Shown here piece by piece: positions 19,634 to 57,693 of a stretch of 64,000 nucleotides of DNA; positions within the stretch are counted from its first letter, which is position 1; each line of letters opens with the position of its first letter. The notes under the pieces are model-generated. The model was not told the origin of the DNA, searched no databases, and saw only the letters and a program-made list of their open reading frames with translations. The DNA lies in the IMG/VR virus record IMGVR_UViG_3300042502_001233, positions 124,001 to 188,000 of that record. The stretch is one strand, 5' to 3'. A program made the position numbers and the translations under genes.

Positions 19634-19680
19634 TATACTATTATGTTATTTTATAATAAATATCTAAAACTAAAAAAAAA

Positions 19681-21111
19681 ATGAATAAAAAAGAAAAATT
19701 TATAAATAAAGCAATAATTAAATTTGGTGATAAATTTAATTATGAAGAAATTGATTATATTGATTCTACAAAAAAAATAAAAATAAAATGTAATAAACAT
19801 GACTTATTTTTCTATCAATCCCCGTCTGAACATTTAAGGGGTAAAAATTCTTGTAATGAATGTACTAGAAACCCTAAAGTTAACACAAATTATTTTGTTC
19901 AAAAATCAAAAGAAATTCATGGTGATAAATATGATTATTCATTAACTAACTATATTGATTCATCAACAAAAGTAGATGTTATATGTAAAGAACATGGTGT
20001 TTTTAGTGTATTACCAAATAACCACTACAAACAAAATTGTCCAAAATGTAAAGAAAAAGATAGATATTTAACAACTAAAGATTTTATTGATAAAGCATGT
20101 ACCTTACATAATAAATATGATTATTCTGAAACAGAATATATGAATTCAAAAACTAAAATTAATATAAATTGCAAAGAACATGGTGTTTTTAAACAAATTC
20201 CCAACGACCATTTAAATGGGAAAGGTTGTCCAAAATGTGGTTTAGCTTATAATAAAATGGAAGATGAAATAAAAGAATTTATTAAATCTTTAAACATAAA
20301 TATTATAGAAAATTCAAAACAAATAATATCACCGTTAGAATTAGATATATTTATACCATCACATAATTTAGCTATTGAGTTTGATGGTTTATATTGGCAT
20401 TCTGAAGTTTATAAAGATAAAAATTATCATTTAAAAAAAACTGAACTTTGTCAAAGTAAAAATATTAGGTTAATTCATATATTTGAAGATGAATGGTTAT
20501 CTAAAAAAGAAATAGTTAAATCTAGATTAAAAAATATGTTAGGTTTAACACCAAATAAAATATATGGTAGAAAATGTGTTATAACAAAAGTTACAGCTAA
20601 AGAAACTAAAATATTTTTAGAAAATAATCACATACAAGGTAACGTTAATTCTAAAGTTAGGTTAGGGTTATATTATAATAATGAATTGGTTAGTCTTATG
20701 ACATTTGGCGGGTTAAGAAAAAACCTAGGGAATACATCAAACGAAAATAAATATGAGCTGTTTAGATTTTGTAATTTATCTAATCATATAATAATTGGTG
20801 GTGCAGATAAGTTGCTTAAATATTTTATCAAACATTATAAACCAAAAGAAATAATTAGCTACGCTGACAGAAGATGGTCACAAGGTGATTTATATAATAA
20901 ATTAAATTTTATTTTTTCACATAACACAAAACCAAATTATTTTTATTTGGTTAACGATAAAAGGGAAAATAGATTTAATTATAGAAAAGATATATTGGTC
21001 AAAGAAGGTTTTGATAAAAACAAAACAGAACATGGTATAATGTTAGAAAGAAAATTATATAGAATATATGATTGTGGTAGTATGTGTTTTAAAATTAAAA
21101 TGACCGATTAA
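19681..21111 (+). CDS. Free-standing endonuclease 1 (Zn-ribbon repeats + Vsr/PD-(D/E)XK-like nuclease + GNAT/Mom-like C-terminal domain)
   Basis: Three C..H...H...CPKC repeats; LDIFIP...AIEFDGLYWH; ELFRFC...GGADKL...SYADRRWSQGDLY; antisense to its neighbours. Confidence 0.75.
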   Translation: MNKKEKFINKAIIKFGDKFNYEEIDYIDSTKKIKIKCNKHDLFFYQSPSEHLRGKNSCNECTRNPKVNTNYFVQKSKEIHGDKYDYSLTNYIDSSTKVDVICKEHGVFSVLPNNHYKQNCPKCKEKDRYLTTKDFIDKACTLHNKYDYSETEYMNSKTKININCKEHGVFKQIPNDHLNGKGCPKCGLAYNKMEDEIKEFIKSLNINIIENSKQIISPLELDIFIPSHNLAIEFDGLYWHSEVYKDKNYHLKKTELCQSKNIRLIHIFEDEWLSKKEIVKSRLKNMLGLTPNKIYGRKCVITKVTAKETKIFLENNHIQGNVNSKVRLGLYYNNELVSLMTFGGLRKNLGNTSNENKYELFRFCNLSNHIIIGGADKLLKYFIKHYKPKEIISYADRRWSQGDLYNKLNFIFSHNTKPNYFYLVNDKRENRFNYRKDILVKEGFDKNKTEHGIMLERKLYRIYDCGSMCFKIKMTD

Positions 21112-21123
21112 TCGGTCATTTTA
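21096..21123. terminator. Perfect 28-bp palindrome / bidirectional terminator
   Basis: TAAAATGACCGATTAATCGGTCATTTTA; contains the stop codon of endonuclease 1. Confidence 0.75.
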
Positions 21124-21124
21124 T

Positions 21125-23626
21125 TTAACTTAACATAATTTTTTTTATTCTATTTAATTCTTCCATCAATTTATAGTTCTCATTTAAATCCATACTGTAT
21201 TGACCTTTATCATTTGGTTGAGGTTCAGCACTAGTTTGAGATGGATTTTTTTGTCTAGGCGCTGCACTAACATTTCGTTTTGTTTGTTTAGTTTTACTTT
21301 GTTTACCACTAGCAGCAGCTTGTTTTCTAAGTTTAACCATGTATTGAAACAACGCTATTGAATCATCCAAAAATTGTAATAAATGTTTTTTAAATTTCTT
21401 TCTGTCTTGAGCATTTTTTTCGAATTGTGTTCTAGCAGCATTAGGGTCGGCTTCATTCATTTTACCAATACCACCTAATTTATCAATTAGACCAGATTGT
21501 TTGTATTTACCAGTGTATATTGTTTTGAATATATCATTGATAAAGTTAGCCATATTTTGATATGCTTGTTGGTTTACAGTTACTATGTTGAACATTTTAT
21601 TAAAATCAGTCTTAACTATAGGGTTTTGTCTAAATCTTTCCAAAAATTGGTCAAAAACTTTATCACCAGTTGGTTTAAGGTTTCTAATTTTATTTCTTAA
21701 CTGTTCAACTCTGTTTAATAAATTTTCAAATTCTACAACTCTAGTTGGGCTAACGTTTTTGTTCAAAAACTTAACCAAAGCTTTATCTCTAAAGTATTTT
21801 GCTTCATCCAACATCTCTTCATCCAACAATGCTTCAGCTAAAGTATTTTTAGGTCCTTTACCAAATTTTTTCTCACTGTTAACAATAAAACCAAATAAAT
21901 TACGTAAAGAGTTGTATAAATCATCATTCATTGCTCCATCAGCGCTATTATCAGTTTTTGTTGTTTTTTGTTTTCCAGTATCTACTCCAGTTCCAGTGTC
22001 TACTCCTGTATCTACACCAGTTCCAGTATCTACACCAGTATCTGTACCAGTATCTACACCAGTATCTGTACCAGTATCGTTTCCTGTTTCATCACCTGTT
22101 GGGGCTGGTATCAAACCAACACCACCATCTAACCCACGCATAGATTGATACAACGCGTTAAGTGTTGCAGCTCTTGATGATTTTTGACCTTTCATTCTAA
22201 CCAATTTAACAGCAGCACCAGTAGCTAACAACCCAATACCAACACCAGCTAACACAGGACCTAAACCTATTAACTTACCAGCTAACGCAGTACCAGCTCC
22301 TTTTACAAGCGTTTTAGTTGCTTGTTTAACAACAATAGTTGCAAAGAATTTAGCAGAACTAGATACACCAAATAGGTTTTGTCCACCACTCATACTACCA
22401 AAAGTTTGGTCAGCTTTGTTGAATAAATCACCCATACTAGCTTGAGGGTTAGAACTAATCATTTGTTGTAATTTTTGCATTTGACCCATTGAGTCGCCAC
22501 CACCATTACCATCAAACATGTGACTAACGTTTTCTGAACCAAATTTGTCAACAAATTGCTGCATATCAGCACCAGTTTTAATATCTTTACCCATTAACTT
22601 ACTAGCCCAATGAACAAAACCTTGTTTGTCATCTGGTCCACCAGTAATATCTTGAGTTATAGCTGGTGTTCTAACTATTTTATCACCACCACCTAGTACC
22701 GTTTCTAACCAAGTTTTAAACCATTCAGTTTGAGCCATCCATCCTAATGCACCTAACGCAGCACCAGTTCCAGCCAATATCAATGGTAATTTGTTAGATT
22801 TAAGGGTATCCATCCTTGTACTATCAAAATCTTCACCATCACCTCTTTTAGCTTGTAATTTAGACCTAATATCACCAGAATCTAAAGGGTCTTCGTCAGG
22901 GGCTACGTCTTCATAATCAACATCTTCAATATCGTTATTTGATTTATAGTTACCAGCACTACCTTGTCCACTAACTTTTGGCCCAGTAGTACCCATTTGT
23001 GAATTACCAGTTCTAGCTGGAAGAGCTTCATCTATACCAAAATATTCATCAATTTGACACATTTGTTCTTCATCAAGGTCATATTCTTCATTCATCAAAT
23101 CATCTTCACCTAGTTTGTCTTCACTCTCATCAAAACCAGAATAAACAGCAGCTAAGTCAGTATCTAAGAATTTTTTTGTGTAGTCTCTTAAATCAGTAAT
23201 AATACCATTAGCAGCGTCAATCGGCATATAACCTTCTTCCTGTGGTGCTTTTTTAGTTGCAGCAACAACTGAATCATATATTGCAGCGATTTCCATAACA
23301 GTTTTTAAGAATTGTTGTGGGTCTTTATTATTAGGGAAATCAGGATTTTCTTCTCTAATTTTAGAATCAAGATTTTTAATTAACTCATTACCTTCTTTAT
23401 CAATAATTTGTTGGATTTTTCTTGCAGCTTCTTGGTCAATTTTACCTTTTCCGAAAATTTTACCGTTGGCTTTGTATCTACCTAATTTAGATAATCCGTA
23501 TTTTACAGAATCCCAAAAACCTTCATCTAACCTTTCGTTACCTTCTATCTTTTCTAGTGTTTCTTTAAGGATTTCATTGATGATAACTGTATGTTGTTGT
23601 TCTGTAAGTATTAATTTTTTAGCCAT
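21125..23626 (-). CDS. Putative internal head/ejection protein with hydrophobic helices and DTG repeats
   Basis: 833 aa; leader MAKKLILTEQQ; many (L/I/M)xE motifs; two Gly/Ala-rich hydrophobic stretches. Confidence 0.55.
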   Translation of the reverse strand: MAKKLILTEQQHTVIINEILKETLEKIEGNERLDEGFWDSVKYGLSKLGRYKANGKIFGKGKIDQEAARKIQQIIDKEGNELIKNLDSKIREENPDFPNNKDPQQFLKTVMEIAAIYDSVVAATKKAPQEEGYMPIDAANGIITDLRDYTKKFLDTDLAAVYSGFDESEDKLGEDDLMNEEYDLDEEQMCQIDEYFGIDEALPARTGNSQMGTTGPKVSGQGSAGNYKSNNDIEDVDYEDVAPDEDPLDSGDIRSKLQAKRGDGEDFDSTRMDTLKSNKLPLILAGTGAALGALGWMAQTEWFKTWLETVLGGGDKIVRTPAITQDITGGPDDKQGFVHWASKLMGKDIKTGADMQQFVDKFGSENVSHMFDGNGGGDSMGQMQKLQQMISSNPQASMGDLFNKADQTFGSMSGGQNLFGVSSSAKFFATIVVKQATKTLVKGAGTALAGKLIGLGPVLAGVGIGLLATGAAVKLVRMKGQKSSRAATLNALYQSMRGLDGGVGLIPAPTGDETGNDTGTDTGVDTGTDTGVDTGTGVDTGVDTGTGVDTGKQKTTKTDNSADGAMNDDLYNSLRNLFGFIVNSEKKFGKGPKNTLAEALLDEEMLDEAKYFRDKALVKFLNKNVSPTRVVEFENLLNRVEQLRNKIRNLKPTGDKVFDQFLERFRQNPIVKTDFNKMFNIVTVNQQAYQNMANFINDIFKTIYTGKYKQSGLIDKLGGIGKMNEADPNAARTQFEKNAQDRKKFKKHLLQFLDDSIALFQYMVKLRKQAAASGKQSKTKQTKRNVSAAPRQKNPSQTSAEPQPNDKGQYSMDLNENYKLMEELNRIKKIMLS
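21978..22082 (-). repeat. In-frame DTG(T/V) tandem repeat
   Basis: Encodes DTGTDTGVDTGTDTGVDTGTGVDTGVDTGTGVDTG. Confidence 0.85.
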
Positions 23627-23696: not shown

Positions 23697-23972
23697 ATGA
23701 TTACAAAAGACCAATTATTTGAACAATACGATAAAAAAGTTGACGCTATATTAGATGTGTGTGATTGGAAAACAAATTTTACCAGTGAAGAAGTTTGTGG
23801 TATTGTTTATAAAATCCTAGAACAGAATAAAATAAACACTTCAATACCAGTTGAAGAGTTCCATAATCTTTATTCGGAAGCTGTGGATAAAATATGGACT
23901 AGTGATATAACAATGCGACAAATAACCGACATTGTTTACGATACATTACTTTCTAAGAATATTGTTGAGTAA
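23697..23972 (+). CDS. Hypothetical early protein
   Basis: 91 aa; TTG-N19-TATCTTTG at 23650-23679. Confidence 0.6.
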   Translation: MITKDQLFEQYDKKVDAILDVCDWKTNFTSEEVCGIVYKILEQNKINTSIPVEEFHNLYSEAVDKIWTSDITMRQITDIVYDTLLSKNIVE

Positions 23973-24356
23973 CCCAGATTCAGTCAACTCATCTTCCATA
24001 CCCAAAGCTTTTGCGTATTGATTAAAATTGCTAACTATTTTTTGGTAGTTTTTAATCATTTTTTTGTGTGGTTCAATCATTCCTTTGGTTTCCAAGTCTT
24101 GAATCAATTCTTCGCGCTTTTTAGGGTCTGAAATAATAGTTTTGATGTTAGACATCGCTTTAGTACTGTTAGTGGCTTTATCAGCGTCTATTTTGTTCTG
24201 TTTGGTTAAATTAATACCTAATATCTTTGCAAAACCCATAAGAGTTAACTTATCATGATTAAATGATATTTCTTTGTCTTCCACAAGCATTCTTTCTTTT
24301 TGTTCGTGGATTAAAATTCTTTGATATTGTTCTTTGGTAATCTTTAACTTTGTCAT
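23946..24356 (-). CDS. Putative internal head protein (true start probably MTKLKITKEQY at 24356)
   Basis: Late motif at 24368-24375 lies just upstream of this ATG; same leader as 16375 and 21125. Confidence 0.6.
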   Translation of the reverse strand: MTKLKITKEQYQRILIHEQKERMLVEDKEISFNHDKLTLMGFAKILGINLTKQNKIDADKATNSTKAMSNIKTIISDPKKREELIQDLETKGMIEPHKKMIKNYQKIVSNFNQYAKALGMEDELTESGLLNNILRK

Positions 24357-24432
24357 AATCTTTTTACTATAAATATCATATAAAACAAAAAAGCTCCCAT
24401 ATTTGGAAGCTTTGATGTTTTGTTTATTTTTA

Positions 24433-24474
24433 TTAGATATTATCAAAAGAAGCACCAGTATTCATGATAACAAA
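24433..24474 (-). pseudogene. Orphan duplicate of the sheath 3' end (FVIMNTGASFDNI*)
   Basis: 42 bp matching 26362-26403 with one synonymous mismatch; 38 bp identical. Confidence 0.9.
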
Positions 24475-24524
24475 ATTTTATTTTTTTTATTGACTTATGT
24501 TATATTTATTAGTATATTTGTATT

Positions 24525-26333
24525 ATGAAAAAAATAAATAAATTTTTAGAAAAATGTAATAATGTACATGGTAATGTATATGATTATTCTTTAGTTAATT
24601 ATATTAATAATAAAACTAAAGTTAAAATAATTTGTTCGATTCATGGTGAATTTGAACAGACACCAGACAAGCATATAAACTCAAAACAAGGATGTCCAAA
24701 ATGTTCGTCAAACTATAAATTAACAAATGAAAATTTTATAACTATATCAAATAAAATCCACAAGAATACTTATAATTATACCAACACAGTTTACTTAAAT
24801 GCAAATTCTGATGTTGATATAATTTGTGAACATCATGGTCTTTTTAAACAAAGACCTAGTGCACATATGTCAGGTCAAGGGTGTCCAAAATGTGCTGGTA
24901 AAAATAAAACCAACAGTGAGGTAGTTAATGAATTTGTTACTGTTCATAAAGATAAATACGATTATTCTTTAGTTAATTATGTTAACCAAAAAACACCATT
25001 AAAAATACTATGTAAAGAACATGGTATTTTTGAACAAACCTATAACACACATAAAAACGGTCACGGGTGTCCAAAATGTGTTGGTAGGAATAAAACAAAC
25101 GAACAATTTATTAAACAAGCAAAAAAAATACACAATAATAAATACAATTATTCGTTGGTTGATTATAATAAATCCAACGATAAAATAAAAATTATATGTC
25201 CAATTCATGGTGAATTTGAACAAAATTCAAACAACCACTTAAATGGAAATGGTTGTCCAAAATGTAAGGGGTTATCAATAATAGAAAAAAAGACAAAGAC
25301 AACTGAACAGTTTATAAGTGAAGCTAAACTTGTTCATGGTGATAAATATGATTATTCTTTAGTTGAATATAAAAATTGTAAAGATTGTATTAAAATTAAA
25401 TGTGTAGAACATGGTGAGTTTGAACAAACACCAGAAATACATTTATCTGGTTGTGGTTGTCAAAAATGTGGTTTTAAATACAATTATAACGAAATCATGA
25501 TAAGCGATTTTATTAAAAGTTTAAATATAAAGACAATTAATAATTCTAGAAAAATAATATCACCACTAGAATTAGATATATTTATACCATCACATAATGT
25601 AGCAATTGAATACAACGGTTTATATTGGCATAGTGAAATAAATAAACCATCTAACTATCATTTAAATAAAACTGAAATGTGTGAAAAACAAGGTATTCAG
25701 TTAATCCATATTTTTGAAGATGAATGGTTATACAAACAAGATATTGTAAAATCTAGACTAAAAAATATATTAGGGTTAACACCCAATAAAATATATGCTA
25801 GAAAATGTGTTATAAAAGAAATAGATATTGAAACATCAAAAAAATTTTTAAATGAAAACCATATTCAAGGTAATGTAAATAGTAGTATTAAAATCGGATT
25901 GTTTTATAATAATGTGTTAGTCAGTTTAATGACATTTGGTAAGGGTAGGATAGCCCTAGGTGGTAATTCAAATCAATTTGAATTGCTTAGATTTTGTAAT
26001 AAATTAGAATCTATCGTTATTGGTGGTGCAGATAAATTACTTAAATATTTTATAAAAACCTATAACCCAAAAGAAATAATTAGTTATGCTGATAGAAGAT
26101 GGAGTCAAGGTGGTTTATACGATAAATTAAACTTTATTAAAACTCATAACTCACAACCAAATTATTGGTATATTAACAATAATCGAAGAGAATATAGATT
26201 TGGTTATAGAAAATCAATACTAGTTAAAAAAGGTTTTAACCCAAATAAAACCGAACACCAAATTATGTTAGATAGAAAAATATACCGAATTTATGATTGC
26301 GGTAATATAGCATACAAAAAAACCCTCTATTAA
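24525..26333 (+). CDS. Free-standing endonuclease 2, paralogue of 19681..21111
   Basis: 602 aa; five Zn-ribbon repeats; the same IISPLELDIFIPSHN and IHIFEDEWL nuclease region and GNAT-like tail. Confidence 0.75.
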   Translation: MKKINKFLEKCNNVHGNVYDYSLVNYINNKTKVKIICSIHGEFEQTPDKHINSKQGCPKCSSNYKLTNENFITISNKIHKNTYNYTNTVYLNANSDVDIICEHHGLFKQRPSAHMSGQGCPKCAGKNKTNSEVVNEFVTVHKDKYDYSLVNYVNQKTPLKILCKEHGIFEQTYNTHKNGHGCPKCVGRNKTNEQFIKQAKKIHNNKYNYSLVDYNKSNDKIKIICPIHGEFEQNSNNHLNGNGCPKCKGLSIIEKKTKTTEQFISEAKLVHGDKYDYSLVEYKNCKDCIKIKCVEHGEFEQTPEIHLSGCGCQKCGFKYNYNEIMISDFIKSLNIKTINNSRKIISPLELDIFIPSHNVAIEYNGLYWHSEINKPSNYHLNKTEMCEKQGIQLIHIFEDEWLYKQDIVKSRLKNILGLTPNKIYARKCVIKEIDIETSKKFLNENHIQGNVNSSIKIGLFYNNVLVSLMTFGKGRIALGGNSNQFELLRFCNKLESIVIGGADKLLKYFIKTYNPKEIISYADRRWSQGGLYDKLNFIKTHNSQPNYWYINNNRREYRFGYRKSILVKKGFNPNKTEHQIMLDRKIYRIYDCGNIAYKKTLY

Positions 26334-26344
26334 GAGGGTTTTTT
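26317..26344. terminator. Bidirectional terminator containing the endonuclease 2 stop codon
   Basis: AAAAAACCCTCT-atta-AGAGGGTTTTTT. Confidence 0.75.
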
Positions 26345-26361
26345 ATTTATTATTTTAATAA

Positions 26362-29202
26362 TTATATATTATCAAAAGAAGCACCAGTATTCATGATAAC
26401 AAACTCAAGTTGAATAAACTCTAAAGCTCTAGTTGGCTTCAAGAAAATTTGACCTGTAAGTTGATTTCTGTCGATATCTTCTGGGTCGTTTGAAAGAACC
26501 ACTCTAAAGTCTGTAAGACCTCTTTCACTTCTAATGTTATCTAAGATTGGGTTAACCAACGCTAAGAATTGATTTCTAACCACGTTATCATTTTGTTCAA
26601 ACAACAATCTGATAGAAACAGCAGAGATAAGTTTTCTTGCTTGTAACAACAATCTTCTTACGTTAATTCTGTCAAGAGCAGACTCTTTAACTTGCATTGT
26701 TTTATTACCCCAGATTTTAATACCATCTGTTGTAAACGTAGCGATTGGGTTGATTCTAGCTTCGTACAACGTATCTCTTTCAGCAAGAGTAAGTTTTTTA
26801 CGAGCTTGGATTGCATCAACATCACCTCTGTTAATACCAGCAACCGCGAACCAAGGGAAAGCAATGTTGTCAGTAAGAGCGATGTTTCTAACTACATCTC
26901 TTGTTGGCGGCATCCAAATGTAAACGTTGTTTTCTGTATCGTTTACTTGAATCCATGGCCAATAAGTACAAGAGTAGTTACTATCATACATACCATCTAA
27001 ACGGTCAGAAACTTCTTCAGCGCTTATTACATCACCAGATAAATCAGTATCTGGTGTTGTCATAATGTACAACGAGTCAGCTCTATCTTGTTCAACCATA
27101 TCGATTGTAGCTTCAATTAAGTTGCTGTTGTAATCGTTGTCGATACCTGGGGTTGCGAATACGTTAATATTAACAGCTTCTGGGTTTCTAAATGTCCAAA
27201 TAGCTTCTAGGTAAGCATAGTAATCAGAGTTGATACCAATATCACCGTTAGTAAGAGTTCTATATTTGAATATTTCACTTTGTAAACCAGCTTGTCCGTT
27301 AGTACCATTTACGACGAAACTATCTAAATTACTTCTTCTAGTTCTGTAAATATCCCAACCATCAAAACCACCGTAAGGTACAAATGTAAATTTACGTGCA
27401 AATATTTTTTCATAGTCAGTTCCTAACACACCAGCTTCAGTTCTAAACTCAGCATTACCAGTATCAAATAGGAATACTGGAGAATATGTGTCACCACTTG
27501 AGTTAATAACAATTTTAACATTGTCAATTGTAGCACCAGTAGCGTCAATATCCATGTGGAAACCATGTGTCATACCAGTCCACATATTTGAATCACCAAC
27601 TGTTGGAATACCTTTATAGTCAAAGAAATCAGAATCAATACCTAAAGTCTCAGAAAGACCTAAGAAAACTTTACGTTTATTTTCAAAAGCGCTATACGCT
27701 CTTTTATACGTTAACGTTGGGTCAACAACTGATTGTCCGTTTGAATCGTAATCTCTAATAGGGAAACCAATAAAACCAGCTGGGAAAGTTGTGCTAGTAT
27801 CACTAGTGTCATCCATTTCAATAAGAACGTAAGATGATTTTGAAGGGTATTCACCATTATAAGTACCAATTCTTCTAGCTATATAGTTGTTAGATGTTGG
27901 GTCAAGAGTACAACGACTAAAGCTTTCCAAGATTGTTGGTTGAGCGTCAGTATCGAAATAACTTCTTATAATAACATCAAACTCTTTAGTGTCTAATTTA
28001 ATATTTCTAATAGATATTTTGAATTGTTCGTTAGCAGCGTTACCATCAGAAATAGTCCAAAATCTGAATAATCTCAATACTTTAGTACCACGTAATTCTG
28101 ATACAACATATGGAGTTACAGCTGGGCTGTATTCTTGTAAGTAATCATCAAAACTTCTGTCATAATCAACAAGAGCTTGTTTTAAACCTCTGATTTTACC
28201 AGCTGCTCTGTCATCTTTAAACATTTCTCTATAGAATTCTTCAACAAACAAAGCTGTATTACCATCATCGTTAGTTCTACCTAATACTCTAGGTAAATAA
28301 TTTTGTTTTGTATTATCCATAGATAGTTGGTAACTAAACGCACCTTGTGTTGTTGATGTACCAGTCAATACAAAATCACCAACAGGGTTTGTAGTAGAAG
28401 TTGTAATACTTGTACTGAAATTTACGTTAGTTGAAGCTGTTATTTCAAATGCTGGAGATTGTAAAGTTGGGTCAACAGAACCTCTAGAACGTAACAACGC
28501 AACCAATTTATCTTCAATACCGCTATAAACAGTACCTGAATAAGTTACTGTAACACCAGTTGTAGAACCTGTTACAAAACCACCTGAAGTACCTACTGAA
28601 GTTACTTTTAAATCAAAAGAAATACCGTTAAAATTAGCACCCACTTTTTCATAATAAGGACCAACACTAACAACATCATTTACAGATGAAGTAGCCAAGA
28701 ATGCTAATTCAGAAGTCAATGTACCATCATTGATAAGTGTTTGAATCAAAGGAACTGAAGAAACAACTGTTACGTTAGTACCACCAGTTGTTGCTGTAAA
28801 TGTTATGAAATTTGAAGTTACTGAAGTTCCAGTGTTTGTTGTTACAACCGAAGCTGGGTCCAAAGCAGCATCCAAAGTGATACCCCATGCAAAACCAGCA
28901 TCATATCCAGAAAACCCTAATACTCTAGTTACGAATAATTGGTTTGATTGTGTTAAATATGATTTAGCGATGTATGGTAATTCATATTTAGGTGCCCCTG
29001 TGTCTTTAACTCTAGTCGCATTTTGCCCACCAAAGAAAGATTGGAACTCGCCATAGTTACCAACAAATATAGGTTGGAATGCTGGACCAATTGTAGTCTC
29101 ACCAACTAAACCTAATGTTGTTACACCTATCTGACGTGTGATAAAAGATAAGTCTTTTTCTGAAGTATATACACCAGGACTTACGAATACTTTTGTTGCC
29201 AT
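26362..29202 (-). CDS. Tail sheath protein
   Basis: 946 aa; VFVSPGVYTSEKD, GLVGETTIGPAF, YWPWI, PWFAVAG..RG, WGNKT, LDRINVRRLL, KPTRALEFI. Confidence 0.92.
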   Translation of the reverse strand: MATKVFVSPGVYTSEKDLSFITRQIGVTTLGLVGETTIGPAFQPIFVGNYGEFQSFFGGQNATRVKDTGAPKYELPYIAKSYLTQSNQLFVTRVLGFSGYDAGFAWGITLDAALDPASVVTTNTGTSVTSNFITFTATTGGTNVTVVSSVPLIQTLINDGTLTSELAFLATSSVNDVVSVGPYYEKVGANFNGISFDLKVTSVGTSGGFVTGSTTGVTVTYSGTVYSGIEDKLVALLRSRGSVDPTLQSPAFEITASTNVNFSTSITTSTTNPVGDFVLTGTSTTQGAFSYQLSMDNTKQNYLPRVLGRTNDDGNTALFVEEFYREMFKDDRAAGKIRGLKQALVDYDRSFDDYLQEYSPAVTPYVVSELRGTKVLRLFRFWTISDGNAANEQFKISIRNIKLDTKEFDVIIRSYFDTDAQPTILESFSRCTLDPTSNNYIARRIGTYNGEYPSKSSYVLIEMDDTSDTSTTFPAGFIGFPIRDYDSNGQSVVDPTLTYKRAYSAFENKRKVFLGLSETLGIDSDFFDYKGIPTVGDSNMWTGMTHGFHMDIDATGATIDNVKIVINSSGDTYSPVFLFDTGNAEFRTEAGVLGTDYEKIFARKFTFVPYGGFDGWDIYRTRRSNLDSFVVNGTNGQAGLQSEIFKYRTLTNGDIGINSDYYAYLEAIWTFRNPEAVNINVFATPGIDNDYNSNLIEATIDMVEQDRADSLYIMTTPDTDLSGDVISAEEVSDRLDGMYDSNYSCTYWPWIQVNDTENNVYIWMPPTRDVVRNIALTDNIAFPWFAVAGINRGDVDAIQARKKLTLAERDTLYEARINPIATFTTDGIKIWGNKTMQVKESALDRINVRRLLLQARKLISAVSIRLLFEQNDNVVRNQFLALVNPILDNIRSERGLTDFRVVLSNDPEDIDRNQLTGQIFLKPTRALEFIQLEFVIMNTGASFDNI

Positions 29203-39324: not shown

Positions 39325-39597
39325 ATGGTAACAATTTACACAATGCAAAACTGCCCATATTGTGCAGAATTAAAAGAACTTCTAACTACTGAAAATATCG
39401 AATTTAACGATATAGATATTTTTGACAAAAAACATGAAAAAGAAGTTGGAGAAATAATGGAAGCGTCAAAAGCTGAAGAAGTTCCAATAGTTAGGATTGA
39501 AAAACAATTATTCATCCCTAACGTTTCTTTTAAAAGTATTACAGAAGCTTGCTATTTGGTTAAAAAAATATTAAGTGATTCCGATATAACTTCATAA
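39325..39597 (+). CDS. Glutaredoxin (NrdH-like)
   Basis: YTMQNCPYC active site, VP motif. Confidence 0.85.
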   Translation: MVTIYTMQNCPYCAELKELLTTENIEFNDIDIFDKKHEKEVGEIMEASKAEEVPIVRIEKQLFIPNVSFKSITEACYLVKKILSDSDITS

Positions 39598-40640
39598 TAA
39601 GGTATTCTAATTAATCTAATATTATTATCAAGACAAAATTTTGTCTTGATAGAATCGTTATGTTTTATTTTTAAAAAACCTAGTTCACCGCCAAATTTGT
39701 TTATAGGTTTATAATGTTGGATTCCGTCGTATTCAATACATATATTATGGTTTGGTAAATAAAAATCAAACGGTAGTACTTGAATGTTTTTGCAATTTAC
39801 AAACGTGTGTTGTTGCTTAAATAAAATATTATTTTCAACTAGATATTCCCTAATCTTTTTTTCACCTTTTGATTCTTTACAAATAGGGCAACCATTGCCC
39901 CTCAAGTGCATATTAGGGGTCTGGTTAAACATACCATGAACAGGGCAAATTATTTTAACTTTAGTTTTTGATTTTAAATAATCAACCATAGAGTAGTCAT
40001 ATTTATTACCATGTATTTTTTTAGCTTCTAAAATAAAATCATTATTAGTCTTATCCCTACCAACACATTTTGGACATCCTTGTTTTAATTTAATGTGAGC
40101 ACTTGGTAATTGTTCAAACACACCATGAACAGGGCAAATTATTTTCATTTTAGTTTTAACGTTTTTAAACTGTATTGATGAATAATCATATTTATCACCA
40201 TGTGTTTTTTTAGCTTCTAAAAGAATATCTTTAGTTGTTTTAAACAACCCATTACACTTACCACATGTTTGACCTTTTAAATGATTATCTGGTGTTTGTT
40301 CAAACATACCATGAATAGGGCAAATTATTTTAACTTTAGTTTTAGCATTTTTATAATTAACTAAAGAATAATCATATTTATTATTGTGTATTAAAATAGC
40401 CTCATTAATAAATATATTATCCTTTTTCCTAGTATTTTCACTAATTTTATCATAACCACATTTATTACAACCTTGTCCCCTAGAAATATGGTGATGTGGC
40501 GTTTGTTCAAACATACCGTGAATAGGGCAAATTATTTTTACTTTGGTCCTAACATCTTTATAATCAACTAATGAATAATCATACTTATTTTCATGTATTT
40601 TTTTAGCTTTTTCGATAAATTTTAAATTTTTATTTTCCAT
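39552..40640 (-). CDS. Free-standing endonuclease 3 (Zn-ribbon repeats + PD-(D/E)XK/DUF559-like nuclease)
   Basis: Four CPxHG...H...C..C repeats; LPFDFYLP...IEYDGIQH; RLIRIPY; late motif upstream. Confidence 0.75.
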   Translation of the reverse strand: MENKNLKFIEKAKKIHENKYDYSLVDYKDVRTKVKIICPIHGMFEQTPHHHISRGQGCNKCGYDKISENTRKKDNIFINEAILIHNNKYDYSLVNYKNAKTKVKIICPIHGMFEQTPDNHLKGQTCGKCNGLFKTTKDILLEAKKTHGDKYDYSSIQFKNVKTKMKIICPVHGVFEQLPSAHIKLKQGCPKCVGRDKTNNDFILEAKKIHGNKYDYSMVDYLKSKTKVKIICPVHGMFNQTPNMHLRGNGCPICKESKGEKKIREYLVENNILFKQQHTFVNCKNIQVLPFDFYLPNHNICIEYDGIQHYKPINKFGGELGFLKIKHNDSIKTKFCLDNNIRLIRIPYYEVISESLNIFLTK

Positions 40641-56796: not shown

Positions 56797-57693
56797 ATGG
56801 AAAAAGAAACAGAAAATAAAATTATTAACCTTTATTTAAGTGGGGTAGGTTCGACAACAATAATAAAGTTAATCCCAAACATAACAAAAAAAAATGTTTT
56901 GAAATTATTAAAAGAAAAAAACATATTAAGAAATCGATTATTAGGTGACGAATTTTATAAAGATTATTGGTTTGATGGTGAATATTGGTGTGGGTTATGG
57001 GTTTGTGAATCATGTAATAATAAAATTAATTTTTCAGTTAAAGAAAAAAGTTTATTAAATAGAAATTTAAAAAGAAAAAAAATATGTAAAAAATGTTCAC
57101 TAGAAAATCAAATAGGTGAAAATAACCCATTTTTTAATAAAAAACATTCAATTGAATCAATAATTAAAATATCAAAAAGTAAAATTGGTATAACAACTAG
57201 CGACCATATGAGTAAATCTGAATATAGAAAAATGTTTAGTGACATGGCTAAAGAACGTTGGGGTAATGGTAGTATGGAAGAAACAAGAATTAAATTAAGT
57301 AATCTAATGAAAGAAAGAATTTCATCAGGTTTATTAAAAAGTTATAATAGGTCTAAAGCAGAAGATGAATTAATATTAACATTAGAAACTAAAAATATTT
57401 TAGTCGAACCAAATTATCTATTAGAAGGTAAAATATTTGATTTATATATACCTAAATTTAATTTATTAATTGAATATAATGGAGATTATTGGCATTGTAA
57501 CCCACAAAAATACGAATCTAATTATTTAAACACTAAAAAAAATAAAACAGCTAAAGAAATTTGGGAGTATGATGCTAAAAAACTTTACTTAGCCAAAAAA
57601 AATCACTATAATTGTGAAGTAATTTGGGAAACAGATTACAAAAAAAATAAAAACATAATATTAAACATATTAAAAAAATATGAAACAAACTAA
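56797..57693 (+). CDS. Free-standing endonuclease 4 (HTH + Zn finger + NUMOD3 + Vsr/DUF559-like nuclease)
   Basis: CESC...CKKC; GENNPFFNKKHS; RSKAE...FDLYIP...IEYNGDYWH; VIWE. Confidence 0.8.
   Translation: MEKETENKIINLYLSGVGSTTIIKLIPNITKKNVLKLLKEKNILRNRLLGDEFYKDYWFDGEYWCGLWVCESCNNKINFSVKEKSLLNRNLKRKKICKKCSLENQIGENNPFFNKKHSIESIIKISKSKIGITTSDHMSKSEYRKMFSDMAKERWGNGSMEETRIKLSNLMKERISSGLLKSYNRSKAEDELILTLETKNILVEPNYLLEGKIFDLYIPKFNLLIEYNGDYWHCNPQKYESNYLNTKKNKTAKEIWEYDAKKLYLAKKNHYNCEVIWETDYKKNKNIILNILKKYETN

What the first reader, a model, noticed from the sequence alone, without database searches (positions are those of the whole stretch)
24433..26403. Sheath gene 3' end duplicated across endonuclease 2
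The last 13 codons plus stop of the sheath gene (FVIMNTGASFDNI*) occur at both 26362-26403 and 24433-24474, with one synonymous difference. The orphan copy is followed by a terminator-like hairpin near 24390-24415, which suggests it is the ancestral end. The cassette would then have inserted inside an essential structural gene and brought a new 3' end plus its own terminator. Near-identity implies a recent event or a long target-site duplication.
Basis: partly seen in the sequence, partly recalled or inferred. Interest (0 to 1): 0.8.

Follow-up and report, generated by a model that had tools for sequence, protein, structure and literature searches.

The report
Homing endonuclease cassette replacing sheath-gene end
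A selfish DNA-cutting gene has moved into the last 42 bases of a giant phage's tail-sheath gene, bringing a spare copy of the gene's end so the sheath protein stays whole; this trick is known from fungal mitochondria, and I found no phage example in the papers I could search.

Summary
The last 13 codons plus stop of the 946-aa tail-sheath gene occur at 26362-26403 and at 24433-24474, with one synonymous difference and no chance matches.

Between the copies lies a 1.9-kb cassette:
- an intact 602-aa Hef-like (Vsr/EDxHD-fold) free-standing homing endonuclease gene on the opposite strand;
- its promoter-like region;
- a bidirectional terminator.

- A collinear relative (L003, about 95% nt identity across the sheath region) lacks the cassette and has one copy. 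Its sheath 3'UTR and terminator match the sequence after the orphan copy.
- A distant phage (L083, sheath 69% aa) carries the same cassette (endonuclease 91% aa) at the same junctions. Its orphan copy has decayed (6 of 42 differences, two non-synonymous) and the native terminator is lost.
- The last 60-80 nt of the sheath gene travel with the cassette. Window vs L083 is 98% identical there, window vs L003 only 80%, and all differences are synonymous.
- Three independent metagenome assemblies give the same structure.

One refinement: the duplication was founded before the cassette reached this genome, so it is not a fresh target-site duplication.

It is a phage counterpart of the fungal mitochondrial "mobile ORF gene hybrids". 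The cleavage site and self-immunity are inferred, not shown.

The parts
26362..29202 (-). Tail-sheath gene (946 aa). It is complete and uninterrupted because the cassette supplies its last 14 codons.
   Evidence: ORF. Pfam sheath domains. tblastn to annotated tail sheaths. 80 homologous loci.
26362..26403 (-). Attached copy: the replacement 3' end of the sheath gene (13 codons plus stop) carried by the cassette.
   Evidence: It differs from L083's attached copy at 1 of 42 bases but from cassette-free L003 at 7 of 42.
26362..26446 (-). Cassette-type (co-converted) tract of the sheath gene. There are 14 differences from L003 in 26362-26440, the leftmost at 26437, and one more at 26446. All are synonymous. 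The next 200 nt upstream differ by about 1%.
   Evidence: profile. (13 codons differ, 0 non-synonymous; binomial P = 6e-6). (last 60 nt: window-L083 98%, window-L003 80%).
26317..26344 (.). Cassette's own hairpin terminator, with an A-run before and a T-run after, so it can serve both the endonuclease gene (+) and the sheath gene (-).
   Evidence: The homologous element is present in L083 and L009.
24525..26333 (+). HEG2: intact 602-aa Hef-like free-standing homing endonuclease gene. It has five CapR/DUF723-type zinc modules, a Vsr/EDxHD-fold nuclease (about aa 318-417) and a Mom-like GNAT-fold C-terminal domain.
24475..24524 (+). Promoter-side end of the cassette. It includes a promoter-like site (TTGACT-17-TATATT, 24490-24518) and a block 87% identical to the region upstream of the paralogue HEG1.
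   Evidence: (D17). Identity to L083 drops sharply at 24474.
24433..24474 (-). Orphan copy of the sheath 3' end (13 codons plus stop). It sits at the ancestral position and is no longer joined to the gene.
24390..24413 (-). Native sheath terminator, still intact after the orphan copy. Stems vary with compensatory changes among relatives.
   Evidence: Sequences of L003, L008, L012, L015, L021, L047 and L063.
23946..24350 (-). Conserved downstream neighbour (134 aa, function unknown). In cassette-free relatives it starts about 85-90 nt after the sheath stop.

Best explanation
This is a free-standing Hef-like homing endonuclease cassette lodged 42 nt before the ancestral stop codon of the tail-sheath gene of an uncultured jumbo phage. 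Read in the sheath's sense, the mobile unit has four parts: (1) a synonymously recoded replacement end of the sheath gene (about 60-80 nt, including the last 13 codons and stop); (2) a bidirectional terminator; (3) the endonuclease gene on the opposite strand; (4) its promoter region. The displaced native end stays downstream as an untranslated orphan, followed by the native 3'UTR and terminator.

Shown:
- the anatomy;
- a collinear relative without the cassette and with a single copy;
- the same cassette and junctions in a distant phage, with a decayed orphan;
- a short tract of the sheath gene that follows the cassette's phylogeny rather than the genome's;
- an intact endonuclease with conserved catalytic residues.

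Inferred:
- During co-infection the endonuclease cuts cassette-free sheath alleles within about the last 75 nt of the gene.
- The break is repaired from the cassette-bearing genome. The sheath coding sequence serves as the left homology arm. The orphan copy plus 3'UTR serves as the right arm.
- The synonymous recoding of the attached copy protects the carrier from its own enzyme.
- The founding duplication arose once, by an illegitimate (ectopic) repair or insertion event in a donor lineage. It reached this genome ready-made.
For: - Two copies, far beyond chance.
- L003 is collinear (91-95% nt identity in the three aligned blocks), lacks both endonuclease cassettes and has one copy. L003 6372-6437 aligns to both sides of the insertion.
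- The sequence after the orphan's stop matches L003's sheath 3'UTR and terminator.
- Window vs L003: 14 mismatches in the last 79 nt of the sheath gene against 1 per 100 nt just upstream. All are synonymous; P = 6e-6.
- L083 has sheath 69% aa and downstream gene 40% aa identity to the window, yet HEG2 at 91% aa at the same junctions with both copies. Its orphan reads FVIMNAGASFDKI (6 of 42 differences) and the native terminator is gone.
- Window-L083 identity is 93-98% across the cassette and drops sharply at the promoter/orphan junction.
- In the last 60 nt of the sheath gene: window-L083 98%, window-L003 80%, L083-L063 78%, L003-L063 97%.
- Endonuclease: AlphaFold mean pLDDT 94.7. Foldseek matches the I-Bth0305I catalytic domain 3r3p (TM 0.79, rmsd 2.4 A) and phage Mu Mom. 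D351, E362, H369 and K382 are invariant, and E323, E349 and N364 conserved, in 34 homologues. Relatives in cultured phages are annotated 'Hef-like homing endonuclease'.
- Hef is placed in the Vsr-like EDxHD family in PMC3239194.
- Co-conversion and intronless homing of free-standing endonucleases in T-even phages are reviewed in PMC2988022.
- No intron family in Rfam.
- Three independent assemblies agree.
Against: - No cleavage, homing or expression data exist; the phage is uncultured.
- The direction of the exchange is not proven by sequence alone. L003's lineage could have lost the cassette by recombination with a cassette-free phage.
- The fungal criterion 'native end resembles the close relative, inserted end does not' fails in this genome. 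The orphan differs from L003 at 6 of 42 sites and the attached copy at 7 of 42. The orphan here is therefore either donor-derived or homogenised by gene conversion.
- The synonymous differences are equally explained by plain co-conversion from a diverged donor, without any selection for immunity.
- Related cassettes at the same spot (L009; remnants in L010 and L011) have no significant orphan copy, so the orphan is not required for residence there.
- Only two independent carriers of the duplicated form were found.
Confidence: 0.8

Rival explanations
1. The cassette inserted de novo in this genome by a transposition-like mechanism that generated a 42-nt target-site duplication.
For: Direct repeats flank the insert exactly, and formally R-X-R cannot tell which copy is new. 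HEG 'transposition-like' ectopic insertions are described for T4-type phages (PMC2988022). An AT-rich 21-nt inverted repeat exists at 24522-24542 / 26342-26362 (I9).
Against: - No transposase or integrase lies in or next to the cassette.
- The left inverted-repeat arm lies 47 nt inside the cassette and covers the start codon, so it is not terminal.
- The same junction is present in the distant phage L083, so the duplication predates arrival here.
- A further roughly 35-nt cassette-type tract lies upstream of the repeat. A target-site duplication does not explain it.
- Both copies differ from the L003-type native sequence.
Confidence: 0.07
2. The window lineage inherited the cassette vertically. 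L003 lost it, either by deletion between the 42-nt repeats or by recombination with a cassette-free phage. There was no recent gain here.
For: 42-nt direct repeats could support precise deletion. The recombination-tract pattern between the window and L003 is symmetrical with respect to direction. Decay and loss stages exist in relatives L010 and L011.
Against: - Repeat-mediated deletion would leave a cassette-type end in L003. Instead L003 has the common cassette-free allele, 97% identical to L063 in the last 60 nt.
- The cassette is 93-98% identical between phages whose sheath bodies are about 75% identical. This demands horizontal transfer in at least one direction.
- The intact orphan and intact native terminator in the window, against the decayed ones in L083, argue for recency here.
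Confidence: 0.1
3. The repeat is an assembly artefact or a chimera of two phage variants.
For: The source is a metagenome assembly, and short repeats can mis-join contigs.
Against: - The identical structure appears in contigs from three different metagenomes, and one contig spans both copies.
- A diverged phage shows the same architecture with non-identical copies.
- 42 nt is shorter than ordinary reads (general knowledge).
- Flanks on both sides are collinear with L003.
Confidence: 0.02
4. The endonuclease sits in a self-splicing intron, and the orphan copy is a real second exon.
For: Many phage homing endonucleases are intron-encoded, including I-Bth0305I of the same nuclease family (PMC3239194).
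Against: - The sheath ORF is complete without splicing.
- The endonuclease gene is on the opposite strand.
- No group I or II intron family was found at E <= 1 in 23900-26700.
- Terminators lie between the supposed 'exons'.
Confidence: 0.01

Closest known systems
Mobile-ORF 'gene hybrids' of fungal mitochondria (Allomyces macrogynus atp6; Glomus atp6, atp9, cox2, nad3), as described in PMC3630166
   Same: An endonuclease ORF sits in the 3' part of an essential gene and brings a foreign in-frame C-terminus. The native C-terminus is left downstream as a duplicate. The differences between the two ends are mostly synonymous. Spread is horizontal.
   Different: The host is a phage, not an organelle. 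The enzyme is a Vsr/EDxHD-fold Hef-like endonuclease, not LAGLIDADG or GIY-YIG. The gene is on the opposite strand with its own promoter and a bidirectional terminator, not in phase with the host gene. In this genome the orphan copy is not closer to the cassette-free relative than the inserted copy.
Hef of T4-like phage U5 and 'Hef-like' free-standing endonucleases (PMC2988022, PMC3239194; annotations)
   Same: Free-standing, Vsr-like nuclease fold, and located between genes of otherwise collinear phages. Full-length similarity of 37-47% to genes annotated Hef-like in Tenacibaculum and Pseudomonas jumbo phages.
   Different: Hef replaces mobE next to nrd genes, and I know of no reported duplication of the target gene's end. 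No direct comparison with the U5 Hef sequence was possible here.
Intronless homing by T4 SegF/SegG (marker exclusion with co-conversion; PMC2988022)
   Same: A free-standing endonuclease gene next to its target gene. It is inherited together with a short flanking tract of donor sequence. The carrier is presumably protected by sequence differences.
   Different: Seg genes lie between intact genes. Here the insertion point is inside the coding sequence, and integrity is kept by a carried replacement end.
mobE in nrdA of Aeromonas phage Aeh1 and mobA in T4 gene 60 (PMC2988022)
   Same: A free-standing endonuclease gene inserted inside an essential phage gene.
   Different: Those insertions split the gene into two polypeptides that must reassemble. 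Here the protein stays in one piece.
I-Bth0305I (PDB 3r3p; PMC3239194)
   Same: Nuclease-domain fold (Foldseek TM 0.79, rmsd 2.4 A, 22% identity) and conserved acidic and histidine residues.
   Different: I-Bth0305I is intron-encoded and uses NUMOD-type DNA-binding motifs. HEG2 is free-standing, uses five CapR/DUF723 zinc modules and has an extra Mom-like domain.

Membership tests
Free-standing homing endonuclease gene (intronless homing) | ORF with a recognised homing-endonuclease catalytic fold and intact catalytic residues | tested here: met
   pLDDT 94.7 model. Foldseek hit to the I-Bth0305I catalytic domain. D351, E362, H369 and K382 are invariant in 34 homologues.
Free-standing homing endonuclease gene (intronless homing) | Presence/absence polymorphism at one locus among collinear relatives | tested here: met
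   L003 is collinear and lacks the cassette. Most of the 80 sheath loci lack it.
Free-standing homing endonuclease gene (intronless homing) | Horizontal spread: the element is more similar between genomes than its flanks are | tested here: met
   Window vs L083: cassette 93-98% nt, sheath body about 75% nt, downstream gene 40% aa.
Free-standing homing endonuclease gene (intronless homing) | Co-conversion tract of flanking target sequence | tested here: met
Free-standing homing endonuclease gene (intronless homing) | Site-specific cleavage of the element-free allele and resistance of the carrier allele | not testable with these tools
   Needs protein and a cleavage assay. Only an inferred interval (26362-26446 equivalent in L003) can be offered.
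Free-standing homing endonuclease gene (intronless homing) | Not inside an intron or intein | tested here: met
   Opposite strand, continuous host ORF, no intron family.
EDxHD / Vsr-like (Hef-type) endonuclease family | Vsr-like nuclease fold | tested here: met
   3r3p_B: TM 0.79, rmsd 2.4 A over 96 columns. Weak TIGR00632 (Vsr) and REase_MTES_1575 hits.
EDxHD / Vsr-like (Hef-type) endonuclease family | Conserved E, D, N/H, H, D catalytic set (PMC3239194) | tested here: inconclusive
   E323/E349, D351, N364 and H369 are conserved. The last acidic residue is assigned to E398-E400 only by spacing relative to Vsr, which I recalled from memory; it was not checked by superposition.
Mobile-ORF gene hybrid with C-terminal duplication (fungal mitochondria) | Endonuclease ORF inside the 3' part of a gene, with an inserted in-frame replacement C-terminus and the native C-terminus kept downstream | tested here: met
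Mobile-ORF gene hybrid with C-terminal duplication (fungal mitochondria) | The native (downstream) C-terminus is closer to the element-free relative than the inserted one is | tested here: not met
   Window: the orphan differs from L003 at 6 of 42 sites and the attached copy at 7 of 42. The L083 orphan is a mosaic of both types.
Mobile-ORF gene hybrid with C-terminal duplication (fungal mitochondria) | LAGLIDADG or GIY-YIG ORF in the same orientation as, often in phase with, the host gene | tested here: not met
   Vsr-fold enzyme on the opposite strand.
Transposable element with target-site duplication | Transposase or integrase and terminal inverted repeats | tested here: not met
   No such gene. 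The only inverted repeat is AT-rich and not terminal (I9).
Group I/II intron with encoded endonuclease | Ribozyme structure, and exons that need splicing | tested here: not met
   One search found no intron family. The sheath ORF is complete.

The most novel reading that the evidence does not exclude
The orphan copy and the recoded attached copy are working parts of a composite mobile element, not scars. The synonymously recoded replacement end is the immunity determinant. The orphan is a built-in right-hand homology arm that abuts the break. Together they let a free-standing endonuclease gene home into the coding sequence of an essential virion gene without an intron, an intein or gene splitting. 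This would be a third route for invading phage genes. The 42-nt repeats would also allow precise excision that leaves an immune, endonuclease-free allele.
Probability: 0.35. Interest if true: 0.65.

Novelty: new variant of a known kind. Interest (0 to 1): 0.5.

Why it matters
Free-standing homing endonuclease genes are thought to be confined to intergenic gaps, or else to split the genes they enter. This locus shows another outcome in a phage: the element carries a spare, recoded end of the essential gene it invades.

It also gives a naturally delimited guess at the enzyme's target, the last roughly 75 nt of the cassette-free sheath gene. A matched pair of alleles is available for a direct test: L003-type (presumed cuttable) and window-type (presumed immune).

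It links phage biology to the 'gene hybrid' mobile ORFs of fungal mitochondria. It also illustrates how such elements move short pieces of structural genes between distantly related jumbo phages.

For annotation, orphan gene ends next to endonuclease genes should be read as footprints of this process, not as assembly errors or pseudogenes of unknown origin.

Tried and rejected
- A possible decayed orphan copy beside the related cassette in L009 sits at the right place, but its local alignment is not significant (64 of 300 shuffles reach the score). It is not claimed. L085, a distant sheath-plus-endonuclease locus, gave nothing.
- Searches for more carriers of the duplicated form failed. An exact junction pattern in IMG/VR found only the window phage and L083. 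A protein-seeded scan of metagenome contigs found nothing closer than 61% identity. Megablast against GenBank phages gave one weak hit to the endonuclease only.
- A PDB sequence search with HEG2 gave nothing useful. The fold search was needed. NCBIfam gave only sub-threshold hits.
- The other endonuclease genes in the window (HEG1; 39552-40640; 56797-57693) have no flanking duplications of gene ends.
- The intron hypothesis was rejected.
- An association between endonuclease presence and particular synonymous codons (for example CTT/CTG rather than TTA for the Leu two codons before the insertion point) is visible. It rests on two or three independent lineages, and some endonuclease-free distant loci share several states, so it is reported only as suggestive.
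- Five literature searches found no phage example of a duplicated gene end beside an endonuclease gene. The Sandegren et al. 2005 Hef paper is not held.
- No such tool was on hand.
Full report
**1. Observation**

On the minus strand, 26403->26362 is the end of a 946-aa ORF (26362..29202). 24474->24433 repeats its last 13 codons and stop (FVIMNTGASFDNI*). The only difference is ATA versus ATC in the last sense codon.

The repeat finder reports the pair as 43 nt at 98% identity, 1929 nt apart (D16). A 38-nt core allowing 3 mismatches occurs only at these two places, and never in 100 shuffles.

The ORF is a tail sheath. Pfam Phage_sheath_1 and Phage_sheath_1C match just under the cut-offs. tblastn matches annotated sheath genes of Flavobacterium, Bacillus, Listeria and T4-like phages at E 1e-46 to 1e-52.

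**2. What lies between the copies**

Window 24525..26333 (+) is an intact 602-aa gene, here called HEG2.

- Its N-terminal half holds five repeats of a zinc module (Pfam DUF723, DUF4379, CapR). PMC10448857 describes this module as the DNA-binding unit of many phage homing endonucleases.
- PHROGs place the protein in families named 'HNH endonuclease' and 'homing endonuclease' at E 1e-164 and 1e-115.
- A model of residues 318-602, built on 34 homologues, has mean pLDDT 94.7.
- Its first about 100 residues superpose on the catalytic domain of I-Bth0305I (3r3p; TM 0.79, rmsd 2.4 A).
- The rest superposes on phage Mu Mom, a GNAT-like fold (8bv8; E 5e-8).
- D351, E362, H369 and K382 are invariant, and E323, E349 and N364 nearly so.
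- Full-length relatives in cultured phages are annotated 'Hef-like homing endonuclease'.
- PMC3239194 places Hef in the Vsr-like EDxHD family.

The gene is preceded by a promoter-like site (24490-24518). It is followed by a hairpin terminator (26317-26344) with an A-run on one side and a T-run on the other. The orphan copy is followed by a second terminator on the minus strand (24413->24390).

A paralogue, HEG1 (19681..21111, 57% identity), lies 3.4 kb away and shares an 87% identical upstream block.

**3. Relatives without the cassette**

The sheath protein recovered 80 IMG/VR loci.

- L003 aligns to the window in three collinear blocks of 95%, 91% and 91% nt identity (sheath 97% aa) and lacks both HEG1 and HEG2.
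- L003 has one copy of the 42-mer.
- After its stop codon comes a 3'UTR and terminator almost identical to the sequence after the window's orphan copy.
- L003 6372-6437 aligns to both sides of the insertion.
- In most other loci the downstream 134-aa gene starts about 85-90 nt after the sheath stop, behind a hairpin whose stem varies with compensatory changes.

The orphan therefore sits where the gene used to end.

**4. The same cassette in a distant phage**

L083 (IMGVR_UViG_3300001605_000415) has a sheath only 69% aa identical and a downstream gene 40% identical to the window. Yet it carries HEG2 at 91% aa, at the same position, with both copies.

- The promoter/orphan junction is at the same base.
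- L083's attached copy differs from the window's at one base.
- Its orphan copy has six differences from its own attached copy, two of them non-synonymous (T->A, N->K).
- The native terminator behind the orphan is gone.
- Window-L083 identity is 93-98% across the cassette. It falls to 72% and then 50-60% exactly at 24474. On the other side it stays at 95% to about 26510.

**5. A short piece of the sheath gene travels with the cassette**

Window vs L003 shows 0-13 mismatches per 100 nt along the sheath region, and 1 per 100 nt in the 200 nt before 26441. In the last 79 nt there are 14 mismatches. Thirteen codons differ and none changes the protein; binomial P = 6e-6.

A four-way comparison makes the incongruence plain:

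| Region of sheath gene | Window-L083 | Window-L003 | L083-L063 | L003-L063 |
|---|---|---|---|---|
| Last 60 nt | 98% | 80% | 78% | 97% |
| More than 120 nt from the end | 55-93% | 88-100% | 72-97% | not summarised |

L063 is L083's nearest cassette-free relative. Further upstream each genome is closest to its own relative. The two carriers share one allele of the gene's end, and the two non-carriers share another.

**6. Which copy is 'native' here**

By position the orphan is the old end. By sequence it is not. It has the cassette-type base at six of the seven positions where the attached copy differs from L003. Only the last codon (ATC) and everything after it are L003-like. L083's orphan is a mosaic of cassette-type and L063/L047-type bases.

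The junction is shared between the two carriers. The simplest history has three steps:
- The duplication was founded once, in some donor, by an ectopic insertion or an illegitimate repair event at position -42.
- Afterwards the whole unit (recoded end, terminator, gene, promoter, orphan) moved by homologous recombination.
- The right-hand exchange point fell at different places inside or after the orphan.

In the window lineage the exchange points lie near 26437-26446 and near 24436. In recipient coordinates this brackets the last roughly 75-85 nt of the sheath gene. A double-strand break that started the event should lie inside that interval. This is an inference from the double-strand-break repair model and from co-conversion in T-even phages (PMC2988022).

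**7. How it most likely works**

- During mixed infection HEG2 would cut cassette-free sheath alleles close to the 3' end.
- Resection and repair from a carrier genome copies the cassette.
- The sheath coding sequence is the left arm. The orphan plus 3'UTR is the right arm, starting right at the insertion point.
- The sheath gene in the carrier is uninterrupted, so the carrier cannot be protected by disruption of the site. It must be protected by sequence differences. The dense synonymous recoding of the attached end is the obvious candidate.
- The last 13 residues are nearly invariant across the 80 loci and lie in or just after the Pfam C-terminal sheath domain (match to aa 839-936). From general knowledge of contractile sheaths, the C-terminal strand takes part in the inter-subunit mesh. 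A truncation at -42 nt would therefore probably be lethal, which explains why a replacement end is needed.

All of this paragraph is inference.

**8. Rivals**

- Assembly artefact is excluded by three independent assemblies and by L083.
- A transposon-style target-site duplication made here is unlikely. There is no transposase, the junction is shared with L083, extra recoded sequence lies outside the repeat, and both copies are unlike L003.
- Loss in L003 by deletion between the repeats is contradicted by L003's allele.
- Loss by recombination with a cassette-free phage cannot be excluded from sequence alone.
- An intron is excluded by the complete ORF, the opposite strand and Rfam.

**9. Comparison with what is known**

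The closest described architecture is the mobile-ORF 'gene hybrid' of fungal mitochondria (Allomyces atp6; Glomus atp6, atp9, cox2, nad3). There an endonuclease ORF brings a foreign C-terminus and leaves the native one downstream (PMC3630166). Partial C-terminal duplications beside endonuclease ORFs are also noted in PMC6279837.

The differences are:
- the host is a phage;
- the enzyme family is Vsr/EDxHD (Hef-like);
- the gene is on the opposite strand and has a bidirectional terminator;
- in this genome the orphan is not the more native-like copy.

In phages, free-standing endonuclease genes are known to sit between genes and drive co-conversion (SegF, SegG, Hef). When inside genes, they split them (mobE in Aeh1 nrdA, mobA in T4 gene 60) (PMC2988022). 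I found no phage report of a carried replacement end in five searches of the held literature. That is not proof that none exists.

**10. Verdict**

It is a new variant of a known kind, of moderate interest. Its main value is a clean, testable natural example with matched carrier and non-carrier alleles.

Noticed in passing
window 19651-21118 (HEG1 gene 19681-21111, +): The paralogous Hef-like cassette is a clean intergenic insertion relative to L003, with no duplicated gene end. Copies 91-92% aa identical sit at the same spot in the divergent phages L063 and L083, whose neighbouring 833-aa protein is only 48-53% identical over most of its length. This points to recent horizontal spread.
   Followed up: partly
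window 25800-26330 (HEG2 aa ~420-602); HEG1 aa 300-427: The C-terminal domain of these Hef-like endonucleases has the fold of phage Mu Mom, a GNAT-like DNA-modification enzyme (Foldseek 8bv8, E 5e-8). Pfam Mom scores 28.3 bits against a cut-off of 27.1 in HEG1. Its role in a homing endonuclease is unexplained.
   Followed up: partly
window 39552-40640 (-) and 56797-57693 (+): Two further Vsr-like endonuclease candidates. The first has four zinc modules plus a nuclease part but no Mom-like end. The second has a NUMOD3 motif and the IEYNG.YWH nuclease motif. That makes four such genes in 64 kb. Neither has a flanking duplication.
   Followed up: partly
window 24654-24953: Inside the zinc-module repeats, HEG2 of the window and of L083 are only 70-88% identical, against 93-100% elsewhere in the gene. 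This suggests exchange or reshuffling of DNA-binding modules.
   Followed up: no
L009:8847-10830; L010:8841-9180; L011:4106-4445: A related endonuclease (67% aa) occupies the same sheath-downstream spot without a significant orphan copy. In L009 a 16-nt repeat of the terminator's descending arm flanks the cassette. L010 and L011 keep only the last 97 codons of the gene, which is a decay stage.
   Followed up: partly
L080:6751-7311 (-): A different opposite-strand gene (186 aa; by eye ClpP-protease-like, not tested) sits between the sheath and the downstream gene. The spot therefore seems to be a general insertion hotspot.
   Followed up: no
L003:6302-6421 vs L063:2831-2950: The last 120 nt of the sheath gene are 97-100% identical between these two endonuclease-free phages, although they are 57-93% identical further upstream. 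This is unusual nucleotide-level conservation of the presumed target site.
   Followed up: no
window 21963-22106 (within gene 21125-23626, -): A 12-nt-period repeat array encodes a Thr/Gly/Val/Asp-rich stretch in the 833-aa protein. It is the most divergent segment against L003 (32 mismatches per 100 nt).
   Followed up: no
window 24340-24360, 24505-24527 and other gene starts: Gene starts lack Shine-Dalgarno sequences. TAnnTTTG-like motifs sit just upstream, and the best cultured-phage relatives of HEG2 are from Tenacibaculum phages. From general knowledge this suggests a Bacteroidota host. Not tested.
   Followed up: no
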